DNA of 64,000 nt from IMGVR_UViG_3300019458_000021:1-64000, one strand, 5' to 3'; shown: positions 545-41,982, counted from the first letter of the stretch. The notes: generated from the sequence alone by a model not told the origin. Numbers and translations: made by a program.

Positions 545-619
545 TGGTAGGAGCTGTAGGGATTGAAACCTACGACCTTCTCGGTGAAACGAGTTGCTCT
601 ACCGCTGAGCTAAGCTCCC
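545..619 (-). tRNA. Degenerate tRNA-Val-like gene (6-nt anticodon loop, 8-nt T loop)
   Basis: Body nearly identical to tRNA-Val at 1016..1090; loop TTTCAC; CCA encoded. Confidence 0.6.
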
Positions 620-11641: not shown

Positions 11642-11703
11642 TGTACAGGGGTGGAATTGAACCACCGACACGCACGCTGCTCTACCAACTGAGCTACCTG
11701 TAC
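11642..11703 (-). ncRNA. tRNA-like RNA lacking the anticodon arm
   Basis: GTACAGG/CCTGTAC acceptor, canonical D and T arms, only 12 nt between them. Confidence 0.75.
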
Positions 11704-11714
11704 AAAGAGCTTGA

Positions 11715-11809
11715 GTTATTGTGTACACGGAAGACGCTGGATTTGAACCAGCTATGTCTGATTTGTAGTCAGATTTTCAACCAATGAAGTAACCGTTGTA
11801 CTACGCAAC
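11715..11809 (-). ncRNA. Structured RNA motif copy B enclosing anticodon arm (ACA) and T arm
   Basis: GTTG-CGTA-GTACAACGG-TTACTTC ... CCGTGTAC-ACAA-TAAC. Confidence 0.7.
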
Positions 11810-14226: not shown

Positions 14227-14291
14227 CGGCGAAGGAGGGATTCCAACCCCCGTTAGCCCCGCGGGGCTGTTCTCCATTAAACTACCTCGCC
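14227..14291 (-). ncRNA. tRNA-like RNA with anticodon loop collapsed to a tetraloop
   Basis: GGCGAGG/CTTCGCC; AGCCC-CGCG-GGGCT; T loop TTGGAAT. Confidence 0.7.
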
Positions 14292-19461: not shown

Positions 19462-19541
19462 TGGTGCTCGAGGGGGGATTCGAACCCCCGACCGATTCGG
19501 TTTTAGAGACCGCCGCTCTGAAACCACTGAGCTACTCGAGC
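19462..19541 (-). tRNA. Amber suppressor tRNA (anticodon CTA)
   Basis: GCTCGAG/CTCGAGC-A-CCA; GCGGT-CT-CTA-AA-ACCGA; perfect T arm. Confidence 0.88.
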
Positions 19542-38799: not shown

Positions 38800-39455
38800 G
38801 ACAGCAACGTCCGATGACAGAAGAAGAATGTGCTTACTTTCAAAAGTTGCTCGATGAACACTTTGACACAAAACGAAAGCTTCAAGAAGCCCGTCGTAAA
38901 GCGATTCAAACGCAGAAGGACATTGACAGAGCGCCTTCTCGTTATTGTGACTTTGTTGTGATTGTGGCAGTTGATCAATACGGCGGAATCGCTAAGGACA
39001 AAACGATTCCGTGGCGGTTTCCAGAAGACATGAAGTGGTTCCAAAATCATACAAAGGGGCACAAATGTGTGATGGGTTGCCACACTTACGAAGAGATTAA
39101 CACGATTCTCGATGAGAAGGCCAAGGACAGCGTGCTGCCTGATCGTGAATGCTTCGTTGTATCTTCAACGCTCGCAGATCTTCCGAACGCAAAGGTGATC
39201 AAGTCGCTGACAGAAATCGAAAAACATCTAGTTGCTGATGAACGTGAAACGGTGTTTGTCATTGGAGGCGAAAGGCTATTCCGTGAAGCATTGGCACTCG
39301 CCAACACGGTGTACATGACAATCATCAACGACGGTTACAATTGCGATCAACACTTTCCTGTCACATTTGTCACGGAACACTTCACTGAGGAACATACATA
39401 CAAAGTCAACACGAACGACAAGTTGCGTTTCACAACTTGGAAGCGAAACGACTAA
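38796..39455 (+). CDS. folA: Dihydrofolate reductase with N-terminal extension
   Basis: GGIAKDKTIPWRFPEDMKWF, VMG, VIGG. Confidence 0.9.
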   Translation: MRQQRPMTEEECAYFQKLLDEHFDTKRKLQEARRKAIQTQKDIDRAPSRYCDFVVIVAVDQYGGIAKDKTIPWRFPEDMKWFQNHTKGHKCVMGCHTYEEINTILDEKAKDSVLPDRECFVVSSTLADLPNAKVIKSLTEIEKHLVADERETVFVIGGERLFREALALANTVYMTIINDGYNCDQHFPVTFVTEHFTEEHTYKVNTNDKLRFTTWKRND

Positions 39456-39858: not shown

Positions 39859-40395
39859 GTGATGTTACTATGGGAAGTGACTGACAAAGAGAAGAAGGGT
39901 TCGTACGCAGGAGTGAGATTTGACACGGCGACGAACAAAGCGATACACAAGTATATCCACGATAACAAAATCCCAACCTCGGTACGTCCGGATCGGCTAC
40001 ACAGTACGCTCTTGTATAGCAGGAAATACCTTCCTAACTACAAGCCAGCTGGTAAGCTTGACAAACCATTGATTGGCACCCCAAAAAGCTTTGAGGTGTG
40101 GAAGACTCGTCCACCGGCCGGCTCTGATGGTAAACCAACAAACTGCCTTGTGTTGAAATATTCGTGCCCCGAACTTGAAACGCGCCACAAAGAGCTGATG
40201 AAGGAGCATAGCGCTCAGTATGACTACGACGAATACTATCCACACATCACTCTTTCGTACGACATTGGCGATATGAACATCAAAGATCTGCCGGACATCA
40301 AAGACACGGTGAAGGAGATCAAAATTGTCGAGGAATATGGTGAGGATCTTGACCTTGATTGGGCACGAAACAAAGGTGTCCGCAAAGGCAGTTAA
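39859..40395 (+). CDS. acb1: Anti-CBASS nuclease Acb1 (T4 gp57B-like 2H phosphoesterase)
   Basis: LHSTLLYS, FEVWKT, YDYDEYYPHITLSY, LDLDW match the T4 57B pattern. Confidence 0.85.
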   Translation: MMLLWEVTDKEKKGSYAGVRFDTATNKAIHKYIHDNKIPTSVRPDRLHSTLLYSRKYLPNYKPAGKLDKPLIGTPKSFEVWKTRPPAGSDGKPTNCLVLKYSCPELETRHKELMKEHSAQYDYDEYYPHITLSYDIGDMNIKDLPDIKDTVKEIKIVEEYGEDLDLDWARNKGVRKGS

Positions 40396-40503: not shown

Positions 40504-40534
40504 TTGACTCCCCGTTTCTTTTGAGGTATAAATA
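40504..40534 (+). promoter_or_regulatory. Composite sigma70 and late promoter for tmRNA
   Basis: TTGACT-17 nt-TATAAA(TA). Confidence 0.75.
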
Positions 40535-40539
40535 CACCT

Positions 40540-40890
40540 AACACTGTGTGAAGCAGCTGCAAGGCGGACAAGACCCGAGTTCGAATCTCGGCATCTCCAC
40601 CAACACGGTTCGAATGATAAGTTGAGTCTAGGGCAGAGGTACAACAGTTGTGAGACACTGCCATTGTGAGAAATGCTAGCAAAGCTCACACACGAACCAC
40701 CTATGGGGGTGAATGGAATTGATTGACGTGCGAGTGGCCAGTGGACAGTGCGAGAGACGACTGACGTAATCAGCGTAAAACGTTAAACGCAAACGACTCT
40801 GCGTACAATGTTGAGGAACTCTACGGAGTAGCTGCTTAACAGCAGCCTTGCCTCGACCGAGCGTGACTGCTTGGGAACAGGAAACGTCAG
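40540..40890 (+). ncRNA. ssrA: Circularly permuted (two-piece) tmRNA
   Basis: Acceptor piece ending CCGAG-TTCGAAT-CTCGG-CATCTCC-ACCA (40602) precedes GGGGGTG (40705) with G3:U70; tag ANDSAYNVEELYGVAA* at 40789-40839. Confidence 0.92.
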
Positions 40891-40920
40891 AAAGAGGAGC
40901 CTCGTGCTCCTCTTTCTTTA
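40890..40920 (+). terminator. Intrinsic terminator after tmRNA
   Basis: GAAAGAGGAGC-CTCGT-GCTCCTCTTTC-TTT. Confidence 0.85.
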
Positions 40921-40929
40921 GGACACATC

Positions 40930-41235
40930 ATGGACCGAATATTACAACTAGATGAAAAGCGGGCTAAGTACTGGCGCACACGTGCTCAAGATCTCTTCGA
41001 AGAAATGAAGGAGGAAGTTCAAACAGTGTTGGGCGTTCCGTTCGTTACGGCGGTTGCGTCACATACTGATTCGTTCTACCAAGTCGGACCACGTTACGTA
41101 TTCAATCAGTTCTCTAAACAGGATGAGTTTGTACACGTACTTGGCGAATATGACCAATCAATGATCCGCATTAAAACCGCGAAATCTCAATCGCTTACCC
41201 CTTATCCTGACGATATACTTACGGCGTTGTTCTGA
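40930..41235 (+). CDS. Hypothetical protein
   Basis: ORF track. Confidence 0.65.
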   Translation: MDRILQLDEKRAKYWRTRAQDLFEEMKEEVQTVLGVPFVTAVASHTDSFYQVGPRYVFNQFSKQDEFVHVLGEYDQSMIRIKTAKSQSLTPYPDDILTALF

Positions 41236-41286: not shown

Positions 41287-41982
41287 GTGTTTACATATAC
41301 CTACAAGAATTCTCGGGCTGAGGAAGAAGAACAGCCGAAAAAAGATCCGAAGAAGAAGCCATACAACGCGTATGAGACTACCTTCACAGCGGCTCAGGTC
41401 CACTTTTACCTTAGCGAAGAAATTGGCGAACCAAACGAATACACCGACATGATTCATCGGATCCTCGTCGCTGGTCCGAATGACATCATCTTTATCCACC
41501 TGAACACACCTGGAGGTCGGCTCGATACTGGTGTTCAAATTGTCAACGCCATGCAAAATTCTCAGGGCAAGATCATCACAGTTCTCGAAGGAATGGCATT
41601 CTCACTTGGTACATTGATCTTCTTGGCAGGCGACGAAATGATCGTCAACGATCATTGTATGTTGATGTTCCACAACTTCAAGAGTGGTATCTTAGGCAAG
41701 GGTCAGGAACTTGCAGCCCAACTTGAGGCAACAATGAAATGGTTCACCGCTCTTGCAAAGAACCTTTACATTCCCTTCTTGACAGAGGAAGAGTTTAATC
41801 GTATTCTGCGAGGCGAAGACATCTACATTCATTCCCCTGAAATTCGACGACGTCTTGATGTAATGATCAAGCAGATGTCAGAGTCGAAGAAACCCAATAA
41901 AGCTACAAGAATCACAAAGCCAACACCACCACCTGGTAAATTGCGCTACGAGGGTGATGACAAGGGTCGTCCTGCAAAGTGA
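41287..41982 (+). CDS. ClpP-like protease
   Basis: LNTPGG, AFSLGTLIFLAGD (catalytic Ser), LMFH. Confidence 0.85.
   Translation: MFTYTYKNSRAEEEEQPKKDPKKKPYNAYETTFTAAQVHFYLSEEIGEPNEYTDMIHRILVAGPNDIIFIHLNTPGGRLDTGVQIVNAMQNSQGKIITVLEGMAFSLGTLIFLAGDEMIVNDHCMLMFHNFKSGILGKGQELAAQLEATMKWFTALAKNLYIPFLTEEEFNRILRGEDIYIHSPEIRRRLDVMIKQMSESKKPNKATRITKPTPPPGKLRYEGDDKGRPAK

What the first reader, a model, noticed from the sequence alone, without database searches (positions are those of the whole stretch)
40504..40920. Two-piece circularly permuted tmRNA in a phage
The acceptor piece (T arm, CATCTCC-ACCA ending 40602) comes first. A 102-nt intervening segment closed by GGTTCG/CGAACC with internal hairpins follows, then the coding piece GGGGGTG with G3:U70 and tag ANDSAYNVEELYGVAA*. 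The pieces can pair (ACAGTG/CACTGT). It has its own promoter and terminator, and a ClpP-like gene lies about 370 nt downstream. Established: permuted ssrA occurs in Alphaproteobacteria, some Betaproteobacteria and some cyanobacteria. This gives a host-lineage clue or an independent permutation, and parallels the permuted tRNAs.
Basis: partly seen in the sequence, partly recalled or inferred. Interest (0 to 1): 0.7.

Follow-up and report, generated by a model that had tools for sequence, protein, structure and literature searches.

The report
Two-piece tmRNA gene in a jumbo phage
The window holds a genuine circularly permuted (two-piece) tmRNA gene, the RNA that frees stalled ribosomes and tags their unfinished proteins for destruction; it is real and probably working, but phage genomes carry hundreds like it, so it is a new member of a known kind.

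Summary
Rfam's permuted-tmRNA model matches 40542-40839 (+) at 97.2 bits (cut-off 47). CCA ends at 40602, the intervening segment is 102 nt, and the coding piece starts at 40705.

Related phage contigs carry the same gene. They keep the promoter, show compensatory changes in the acceptor stem, PK1 hairpin and stop-codon hairpin, and have a tag that differs by synonymous changes and one in-frame indel. The gene is therefore under selection.

This is not an independent permutation. It is a divergent member of the betaproteobacterial-type two-piece tmRNAs, and it sits inside a large phage-borne radiation. At least 237 IMG/VR contigs carry permuted tmRNAs with 65-126 nt intervening segments.

The host-lineage clue is weak. 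Family members occur in Xanthomonas phage Xoo-sp13. They also occur as second copies in bacteria whose own tmRNA is one-piece.

A ClpP-like gene follows the tmRNA in the close relatives L006/L007 and L008 and in five more distant viral contigs, which suggests a functional link that remains untested. No RNA data exist. No SmpB or ClpX-type gene is present, so host factors are needed.

Verdict: new member of a known kind, with modest interest.

The parts
40504..40533 (+). Sigma-70-type promoter: -35 TTGACT (40504-40509), a 17-nt spacer and -10 TATAAAT (40527-40533). The transcription start is inferred at about 40539-40541.
   Evidence: Read. L006 and L010 have TTGACC, 17 nt, TATAAAT with diverged spacers. 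The region aligns to the promoter part of the beta_tmRNA model. The strict scan did not flag it.
40540..40602 (+). Acceptor piece, about 63 nt. It holds the P2 5' strand CACUGU (40542-40547), the T arm (40575-40591), the acceptor 3' strand CAUCUCC (40592-40598), the discriminator A and the encoded CCA (40599-40602). The 5' end is inferred from the promoter.
   Evidence: RF04321 alignment and RNAalifold pairs for the T arm and acceptor stem.
40603..40704 (+). Intervening segment of 102 nt, removed on maturation. It is closed by GGUUCG (40607-40612) pairing with CGAACC (40693-40698). U is at position -1 before the RNase P site.
   Evidence: A stem closing the intervening segment is a family feature with many compensatory changes. 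The segment is single-copy in the genome. Its fold is not better than shuffles, and no Rfam family matches it.
40705..40919 (+). Coding piece. It holds the acceptor 5' strand GGGGGUG (40705-40711), a D-loop-like region, the P2 3' strand ACAGUG (40745-40750), the PK1 hairpin (40757-40776), the tag frame, the stop-codon hairpin, a 3' domain and the terminator.
   Evidence: RF04321 and RF01850 alignments and RNAalifold covariation.
40789..40839 (+). Tag reading frame from resume codon GCA to TAA, encoding ANDSAYNVEELYGVAA.
   Evidence: and ARAGORN -ps. Relatives encode ANDENAYTVEELYGVAA and ANDMAYDVEALYGVAA, with five synonymous differences and one 3-nt in-frame indel.
40831..40846 (+). Hairpin GCUGCU / UAAC / AGCAGC, with the stop codon in its loop.
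   Evidence: Fold. L006 has GCAGCC/GGCUGC, with two pairs changed on both sides.
40889..40919 (+). Intrinsic terminator: a 12-bp stem (40889-40900 with 40906-40917) whose 3' arm runs into UUUCUUU.
   Evidence: It aligns to the terminal helix of beta_tmRNA. Relatives have different G+C-rich hairpins followed by a T run at the same place.
40930..41235 (+). ORF of 101 aa of unknown function, lying between the tmRNA and the ClpP-like gene.
   Evidence: It has no Pfam, PHROG or Atlas lead. By eye, a similar ORF occupies the same position in L006; no alignment was run. L008 has no such ORF.
41287..41982 (+). ClpP-like serine protease of 231 aa.
   Evidence: Pfam CLP_protease scores 55.6 bits (cut-off 20.2). 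PHROG 1827 'ATP-dependent protease' scores 193.9 bits. Its Ser and His lie in the conserved GMAxS and H motifs of solved ClpP; that these are the catalytic residues is from general knowledge. The gene lies directly downstream of the tmRNA in L006/L007, L008 and five more distant viral contigs.

Best explanation
This is a working ssrA gene of the two-piece, circularly permuted form. It is a divergent betaproteobacterial type, carried by a jumbo phage from a cave metagenome.

Inferred mechanism:
1. Host RNA polymerase starts at the sigma-70-type promoter, near 40540. It makes one precursor of about 380 nt that ends at the terminator, near 40919.
2. The stem closing the intervening segment holds the two acceptor strands together.
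3. Host RNase P cuts 5' of G40705. The 3' side is trimmed back to the encoded CCA at 40602, so the 102-nt segment is lost.
4. The two pieces stay together through the 7-bp acceptor stem and helix P2 (CACUGU/ACAGUG and neighbouring pairs).
5. Host alanyl-tRNA synthetase charges the RNA through G3:U70 and the discriminator A.
6. With host SmpB and EF-Tu it enters stalled ribosomes. Translation resumes at GCA 40789 and adds AANDSAYNVEELYGVAA, which marks the protein for ClpXP-type proteolysis.

For the phage, the likely benefit is to keep ribosomes free and recycle amino acids while host mRNA is being destroyed. The adjacent ClpP-like protease may take part.

Shown here: the gene anatomy, its conservation and covariation, the family membership and the synteny. 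Inferred from known tmRNA biology: transcription, processing, charging, tagging and the benefit to the phage.
For: Detection and subtype:
- RF04321 scores 97.2 bits over a cut-off of 47.
- ARAGORN with -ps gives the same gene and the same tag.
- beta_tmRNA is the best lineage model. It matches end to end, from promoter to terminator.

Relatives:
- L006/L007, L010 and L008 each carry a permuted tmRNA, as does Xoo-sp13.
- Their acceptor stems differ by paired changes: GGGGGUG/CAUCUCC, GGGCCCG/CGGGUCC, GGGGAUG/CAUCUCC and GGGCCUG/CAGGUCC. All keep G3:U70.

Covariation and selection:
- RNAalifold on 14 sequences finds 27 of 34 pairs with compensatory change, and G3:U70 in 14 of 14.
- The PK1 hairpin covaries at one pair: U:A in the window, U:G in L006 and C:G in L010.
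- The stop-codon hairpin also covaries.
- The tag is conserved at the peptide level through synonymous changes and an in-frame indel.

Genuineness of the locus:
- The same locus was assembled identically from two samples.
- Phage genes lie on both sides.
- Complete relatives lack SmpB and ClpX-type ATPases, so they must depend on the host.
Against: - No RNA data exist. No RNA run could be listed, so co-transcription, processing and charging are unobserved.
- The window's gene falls below the cut-offs of all three lineage-specific Rfam models (60.9 against 84; 37.6 against 50; no cyano match). It also falls below ARAGORN's default threshold.
- The helix next to the tRNA-like domain (P2a) has mismatches, and the D-loop-like region departs from the usual UGGUUUCGAC.
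- The T loop of relative L006 is aberrant.
- The host is unknown, so compatibility with its SmpB and AlaRS cannot be judged.
Confidence: 0.85

Rival explanations
1. The RNA is made but acts mainly as a competitor or modifier of host trans-translation rather than as a rescue system. It might occupy host SmpB, or redirect tagging to a phage-specific tag. A tag-less tmRNA-like RNA of mycobacteriophage DS6A is reported to do something similar.
For: - The DS6A tmRNA-like RNA inhibits the endogenous tmRNA (stated in PMC11915505).
- The tRNA-like domain of the window clade is unusual.
- The tag carries a clade-specific extension, VE(E/A)LYGVAA.
- There is no phage SmpB.
Against: - A complete tag frame with resume codon and an AA-stop ending is conserved at the peptide level. 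A pure decoy would not need this.
- G3:U70, CCA and the T arm are all kept.
Confidence: 0.07
2. The gene is a decaying relic that is no longer functional.
For: - Scores are sub-threshold in ARAGORN's default run and in the lineage-specific models.
- P2a is weak.
- The branches in the tree are very long.
Against: - Compensatory changes keep every main helix.
- The promoter and terminator are conserved.
- Tag changes are synonymous, and the one indel is in frame.
- The gene persists in at least four diverged phage genomes.
Confidence: 0.05
3. The permutation arose independently in this phage lineage from a one-piece tmRNA.
For: The window's gene fails the cut-offs of all three lineage models.
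Against: - It aligns end to end with the beta model, including the promoter, P2, the PK1 hairpin, the loop motif of the 3' domain and the terminator.
- The relative L008 and five more distant viral contigs pass the beta cut-off at 106-126 bits.
- In the tree it nests among viral and bacterial beta-type sequences.
Confidence: 0.02
4. The sequence is host DNA, a fragment of an integration site, or an assembly artefact.
For: tmRNA genes are common integration sites for mobile elements (PMC12595487).
Against: - The gene is full length, with both pieces and its own promoter.
- It lies 40 kb inside a 237-kb phage contig, between Acb1 and ClpP-like genes.
- An identical sequence lies in contigs from two samples, with no differences.
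- No bacterial genome matched the clade-specific pattern.
Confidence: 0.01

Closest known systems
Betaproteobacterial two-piece tmRNA (Rfam RF01850 beta_tmRNA; native in Thauera, Azonexus/Dechloromonas, Accumulibacter and Gallionellaceae)
   Same: - The gene order is the same: promoter, acceptor piece, intervening hairpin, coding piece, terminator.
- It has G3:U70.
- It has a P2 helix between the extreme 5' end and the region before PK1.
- The PK1 hairpin has a CGUAA loop of the Thauera kind.
- The tag begins AND.

   Different: - It scores 60.9 bits against a cut-off of 84.
- The P2 sequence is CACUGU/ACAGUG instead of GGUUGU/GCAACC.
- The D-loop-like region and P2a are divergent.
- The tag is 16 residues ending YGVAA, where the native genes have about 10 residues ending LAA.
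- The intervening segment is 102 nt, against 18-42 nt in the sampled bacteria. That upper bound was set by my search pattern.
- The gene sits on a phage.
Phage-borne beta-type two-piece tmRNAs in IMG/VR contigs (for example L201, L285, L297, L156, L349) and the unannotated tmRNA of Xanthomonas phage Xoo-sp13 (MN047793.1, 39030-39373)
   Same: - All are viral, with long intervening segments of 65-147 nt closed by a stem.
- The 5' end has a ...UGUAUGAAGC-like motif directly after the -10 box.
- The tags start ANDxxY/F; L201's ANDSAYALAA shares its first six residues with the window's tag.
- Several are followed by a ClpP-like gene.
- Xoo-sp13 shares the ligase, ClpP, primase gene order.

   Different: - The window, L006 and L010 form their own long-branched clade.
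- That clade has an extended tag and a deviant tRNA-like domain.
- ARAGORN's default run finds 92% of the others but not this one.
- In Xoo-sp13 the tmRNA lies about 54 kb from the ClpP gene.
Two-piece tmRNAs of marine phages (OM43 phage Melnitz, pelagiphages, cyanophages; PMC9004378)
   Same: - These are phage-encoded permuted ssrA genes placed behind an early promoter.
- The phage's tmRNA type need not match the host's.
- The proposed roles are ribosome maintenance or protein turnover.
   Different: - Those are alpha- or cyano-type and marine.
- Some carry a glutamine riboswitch. No riboswitch or other Rfam family was found here.
Caulobacter two-piece tmRNA (alphaproteobacterial type)
   Same: It is the experimental model for the mechanism assumed here: one precursor is cut by tRNA-processing enzymes into two base-paired pieces that support tagging (as summarised in PMC11915505 and PMC9004378).
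   Different: It belongs to a different lineage. The alpha model scores only 37.6 bits here, below its cut-off of 50.

Membership tests
tmRNA, permuted (two-piece) form, Rfam RF04321 | Score at or above the curated gathering score | tested here: met
   97.2 bits against 47, covering model positions 1-213 in full.
tmRNA, permuted (two-piece) form, Rfam RF04321 | Circularly permuted gene order: the 3' acceptor part with T arm and CCA lies upstream of the 5' acceptor strand and tag template | tested here: met
   CCA ends at 40602 and G1 lies at 40705 on the same strand.
tmRNA, permuted (two-piece) form, Rfam RF04321 | 7-bp acceptor stem between the pieces, with G3:U70, discriminator A and CCA | tested here: met
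   GGGGGUG pairs with CAUCUCC, followed by ACCA. G3:U70 is present in 14 of 14 aligned sequences, and other stem positions covary.
tmRNA, permuted (two-piece) form, Rfam RF04321 | Tag reading frame with a resume codon, ending in hydrophobic residues plus a stop | tested here: met
   The frame runs from GCA at 40789 to TAA at 40839. The tag ends VAA. It is conserved in relatives through synonymous changes and an in-frame indel.
tmRNA, permuted (two-piece) form, Rfam RF04321 | Pseudoknot PK1 upstream of the resume codon | tested here: inconclusive
   The hairpin at 40757-40776 with a CGUAA loop is supported by covariation. The second stem of a pseudoknot would have only 2-3 pairs (GCG with CGU), and this was not tested.
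tmRNA, permuted (two-piece) form, Rfam RF04321 | Precursor processed into two base-paired RNAs | not testable with these tools
   Only DNA runs from cave metagenomes hold the sequence. No RNA run was listed.
tmRNA, permuted (two-piece) form, Rfam RF04321 | Alanylation, SmpB binding and tagging of stalled chains | not testable with these tools
   This needs biochemistry. SmpB would have to come from the host, because none is found in this record or in complete relatives.
beta_tmRNA, Rfam RF01850 | Score at or above the gathering score of 84 bits | tested here: not met
   The window scores 60.9 bits, although the match is end to end. Relatives pass: L008 at 126.3 bits, and L201, L297, L156 and L285 at 106-119 bits. 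I therefore call it beta-like and divergent, not a formal RF01850 member.
alpha_tmRNA RF01849 / cyano_tmRNA RF01851 | Score at or above the gathering score | tested here: not met
   The alpha model scores 37.6 bits against 50. The cyano model has no match at the locus.
ClpP (Pfam PF00574) for the neighbouring gene | Family score over the cut-off, and the catalytic Ser-His-Asp triad | tested here: inconclusive
   The family score is 55.6 bits against 20.2. Ser and His lie in the conserved GMAxS and H motifs of solved ClpP; that these are the catalytic residues is from general knowledge. The Asp region did not align. No ClpX/ClpA-type partner is present in the record.

The most novel reading that the evidence does not exclude
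In this phage lineage the tmRNA, the small ORF of 101 aa and the ClpP-like protease would form one phage-run module. The phage would supply its own extended tag (…VEELYGVAA) and its own protease core, perhaps with the small protein as an adaptor. Together they would take over protein quality control and amino-acid recycling in a host whose own tmRNA is of the one-piece type.
Probability: 0.15. Interest if true: 0.6.

Novelty: new member of a known kind. Interest (0 to 1): 0.3.

Why it matters
The gene adds one divergent example to the known set of phage-encoded tmRNAs.

It also points to three things of modest general interest:
1. A large phage-borne radiation of beta-type two-piece tmRNAs exists. 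Its members turn up in phages and genomes of bacteria whose own tmRNA is one-piece, so the tmRNA type should not be used as a host marker.
2. Divergent members, including the one in the isolated Xanthomonas phage Xoo-sp13, escape default ARAGORN annotation.
3. A recurrent tmRNA-ClpP-like gene pair offers a testable link between phage-directed tagging and proteolysis.

Tried and rejected
- blastn of the locus against 50,697 phage records found nothing.
- The first pattern for long-spacer relatives found nothing.
- The clade-specific pattern found no bacterial genome. Its only new metagenome hit, L012, was a chance match inside a protein-coding gene.
- The intervening segment was tested as a structured or mobile element. 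Its fold is no better than shuffles. It is single-copy in the genome. No Rfam family matches it. Its length is ordinary among viral permuted tmRNAs. It is therefore not special.
- A long spacer was considered as the reason ARAGORN missed the gene, and rejected. ARAGORN finds 214 of 233 viral genes with 65-126 nt spacers.
- Host inference from a tmRNA tree was tried. With bacteria alone, the placement is unresolved and the branches are saturated. With viral sequences added, the clade nests among viral sequences.
- The extra two-piece copy in Stenotrophomonas has no prophage genes recognisable nearby.
- The 101-aa ORF was checked as a possible adaptor. It has no Pfam, PHROG or Atlas lead.
- An RNA-level test could not be made, because no RNA run was listed.
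- Two founding papers on two-piece tmRNA are not held in the library.
- The supplements of the tmRNA database paper held nothing on phages.

Full report
**Source of the window**

The window is the first 64 kb of a 237,379-bp linear IMG/VR virus record, estimated 68% complete. It was assembled from cave metagenomes. The window carries about 27-30 tRNA genes. Its genes include an NAD-dependent DNA ligase, DHFR, an Acb1 anti-CBASS protein, a primase-like protein and an SprT-like protein. The ligase, ClpP, primase order matches the 309-kb Xanthomonas jumbo phage Xoo-sp13.

**The observation**

- The T arm is at 40575-40591.
- CAUCUCC-ACCA ends at 40602.
- The intervening segment is 40603-40704, 102 nt. 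GGUUCG (40607-40612) pairs with CGAACC (40693-40698).
- GGGGGUG starts at 40705. It pairs with CAUCUCC, giving G3:U70.
- CACUGU (40542-40547) is complementary to ACAGUG (40745-40750).
- The frame from GCA 40789 to TAA 40839 reads ANDSAYNVEELYGVAA.
- The ClpP-like ORF starts 367 nt after the terminator.

Detectors give these results:
- Rfam's merged permuted-tmRNA model RF04321 matches 40542-40839 at 97.2 bits. Its cut-off is 47 and E is 1e-17.
- ARAGORN does not call the gene at default thresholds.
- With its -ps option ARAGORN reports a permuted tmRNA with the same tag.

Two details are weaker than stated.
- The hairpins inside the intervening segment fold no better than shuffled sequence (z = -0.95).
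- The promoter and terminator fail the strict rules of the scan tool. Comparative evidence supports both, as shown below.

**Relatives and selection**

A search with the ClpP-like protein found four related viral contigs. Three of them hold a permuted tmRNA directly upstream of the ClpP-like gene.
- L006 and L007 have the same sequence from two samples. RF04321 scores 120.5 bits and the spacer is 5 nt.
- L008 lies in a complete 350-kb genome with terminal repeats. It scores 126.3 bits on the beta_tmRNA model, above the cut-off of 84. Its spacer is 80 nt.

A DNA pattern found L010, with a 13-nt spacer. ARAGORN independently calls permuted tmRNAs in L008 and L010. The window's locus was assembled identically from a second sample (L015). 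The source contigs show no differences.

*Promoter and terminator.* The window, L006 and L010 share TTGAC(T/C), 17 nt, TATAAAT, with diverged spacers. Each has a different G+C-rich terminator hairpin at the same place.

*Acceptor stems.* The stems differ by paired changes, and G3:U70 is always kept:
- window: GGGGGUG/CAUCUCC
- L006: GGGCCCG/CGGGUCC
- L010: GGGGAUG/CAUCUCC
- L008 and Xoo-sp13: GGGCCUG/CAGGUCC

Short contigs from a third cave sample point to a further variant, GGGGUCG/CGACUCC. This is fragmentary evidence.

*Covariation.* RNAalifold on 14 phage and bacterial sequences recovers the T arm, the acceptor stem, helix P2a, a stem closing the intervening segment and the PK1 hairpin. 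Of 34 pairs, 27 show compensatory change. The stop codon sits in the loop of a hairpin that covaries: GCUGCU/AGCAGC in the window and GCAGCC/GGCUGC in L006.

*The tag.* The three clade tags are ANDSAYNVEELYGVAA, ANDENAYTVEELYGVAA and ANDMAYDVEALYGVAA. They differ by five synonymous changes, three replacement positions and one 3-nt indel. This pattern fits a frame that is translated.

**Which kind of tmRNA**

Of the three lineage models, beta_tmRNA fits best. It scores 60.9 bits over the whole model, from the promoter to the terminator helix. The alpha model scores 37.6 bits. The cyano model does not match at the locus. All three scores are below their cut-offs, so the window's gene is divergent.

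Its relatives are clear beta-type genes. L008 passes the cut-off, as do more distant viral genes at 106-119 bits. An independent permutation is therefore very unlikely.

**How common it is**

Two pattern scans of IMG/VR looked for a T arm and CCA, followed 65-126 nt later by a matching 5' acceptor strand.
- Of 238 matches, 237 have a perfect 7-bp acceptor stem with G3:U70.
- ARAGORN of 233 of them.

Long intervening segments are therefore ordinary in viral permuted tmRNAs. In those examined, a long terminal stem closes the segment and ends about 4 nt before G1.

Published work already reports such genes:
- 53 two-piece tmRNAs among isolated phages, mostly marine (PMC9004378)
- 79 phage tmRNAs in the tmRNA database (PMC11915505)
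- tmRNAs in huge phages (PMC7162821)

**Host clue**

A scan of bacterial genomes found beta-type two-piece genes mainly in Rhodocyclaceae, Zoogloeaceae, Azonexaceae and Gallionellaceae. It also found them in Stenotrophomonas, Cupriavidus, Herbaspirillum and Pseudaquabacterium.

One genome from each of those four genera was checked, and each also holds a standard one-piece tmRNA at 189-217 bits. Thauera does not. Their two-piece genes are therefore second copies, and the three rescanned (Stenotrophomonas, Pseudaquabacterium, Herbaspirillum) pass the beta cut-off.

Xoo-sp13 infects Xanthomonas. It carries an unannotated permuted tmRNA at 39030-39373, scoring 65.7 bits. Its spacer is about 147 nt and its tag is DNVDSFDFAMAA.

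Two trees were built.
- With bacteria alone, the window, L006 and L010 form a strongly supported clade (100/99). The branches are saturated and the placement is unresolved.
- The second tree added 182 unique viral sequences. Viral and bacterial labels then need only 4 changes on the tree, against about 68 when shuffled.
- In that tree the window clade sits inside an all-viral group of 33 tips (SH-aLRT 78-79). The bacterial second copies fall among viral sequences.

Left out of the trees were 12 bacterial loci cut at contig ends, duplicate viral sequences, and viral loci with too little flank.

The conclusion is that this is a long-standing phage-borne lineage. Its type says little about the host. 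Beta- or gammaproteobacteria are the most plausible hosts.

**The ClpP-like neighbour**

The 231-aa protein matches Pfam CLP_protease at 55.6 bits. It matches PHROG 1827 'ATP-dependent protease' at 193.9 bits, well above any head-maturation protease family. Its Ser and His lie in the conserved GMAxS and H motifs of solved ClpP, which I take from general knowledge to be the catalytic residues. The Asp region did not align.

Five of the 237 more distant viral loci also have a homologue, at 28-36% identity, directly downstream of the tmRNA on the same strand. All five of those tmRNAs are called by ARAGORN with tags starting AND. The four rescanned with Rfam pass the beta_tmRNA cut-off.

In Xoo-sp13 the two genes are far apart. 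The pairing recurs, but it is not universal, and it could simply be inherited gene order.

No SmpB gene and no ClpX/ClpA-type ATPase is found in this record or in the complete genomes of L008 and Xoo-sp13. Host factors would be required.

**Mechanism**

The proposed sequence of events is as follows.
1. One precursor is transcribed from the sigma-70-type promoter. Given the neighbouring anti-defence and replication genes, this is probably early in infection.
2. RNase P cuts before G40705. U is at position -1.
3. The 3' side is trimmed to the encoded CCA.
4. The two pieces are held together by the acceptor stem and P2.
5. The RNA is charged with alanine through G3:U70.
6. It enters stalled ribosomes with host SmpB and tags the unfinished chain.

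The anatomy and its conservation are shown here. The steps themselves are inferred from the established biology of two-piece tmRNAs, as summarised in PMC11915505 and PMC9004378.

Less likely alternatives are a decoy or modifier of host trans-translation, a decaying relic, an independent permutation, and host DNA or an assembly artefact. Their weights are given in the rival explanations.

**Verdict**

The finding is real and correctly interpreted. It is a new, divergent member of a known and abundant kind. Interest is modest.

Noticed in passing
window 39859-40395 (+): The gene directly upstream of the tmRNA encodes a 178-aa Acb1 anti-CBASS protein (Pfam PF23474, 114.9 bits). It is a counter-defence gene.
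   Followed up: no
window 19462-19541 (-): A tRNA with anticodon CUA, a possible amber suppressor. ARAGORN labels it tRNA-Pyl, and the Rfam tRNA model scores 64.1 bits. It might indicate TAG read-through or recoding in this phage.
   Followed up: no
window 545-619, 11642-11703, 11736-11791, 14227-14291 (-): Odd tRNA-like genes. One has an undetermined two-base 'anticodon' (ARAGORN). Three short Rfam tRNA matches were missed by ARAGORN.
   Followed up: no
MN047793.1 39030-39373 (locus L108 1501-1844): Xanthomonas phage Xoo-sp13 carries a permuted tmRNA that the GenBank record does not annotate. RF04321 scores 65.7 bits. The spacer is about 147 nt and holds a TATAAAT motif about 30 nt before the coding piece. 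The tag is DNVDSFDFAMAA with a GAC resume codon. ARAGORN misses it.
   Followed up: partly
Loci L072/L117 (Stenotrophomonas rhizophila), L071/L118 (Pseudaquabacterium), L063/L119 (Herbaspirillum), L090 (Cupriavidus): These bacteria hold both a standard one-piece tmRNA and a beta-type two-piece tmRNA. In the tree the second copies fall among viral sequences. The Stenotrophomonas copy has no recognisable prophage genes nearby.
   Followed up: partly
IMG/VR loci L123-L360: Hundreds of viral contigs carry permuted tmRNAs with 65-126 nt intervening segments closed by long stems. Many lie within tRNA arrays.
   Followed up: partly
Runs X1 and X2 (cave metagenomes): The window's phage and the L006-type relative occur together in the same two samples at comparable depth: 42 and 9 in one, 16 and 24 in the other.
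   Followed up: no
L006 3320-3340: The T loop of the L006/L007 tmRNA reads GGCGGUA instead of the usual UUCGAAU, although the gene scores 120.5 bits overall. ARAGORN does not call it.
   Followed up: no
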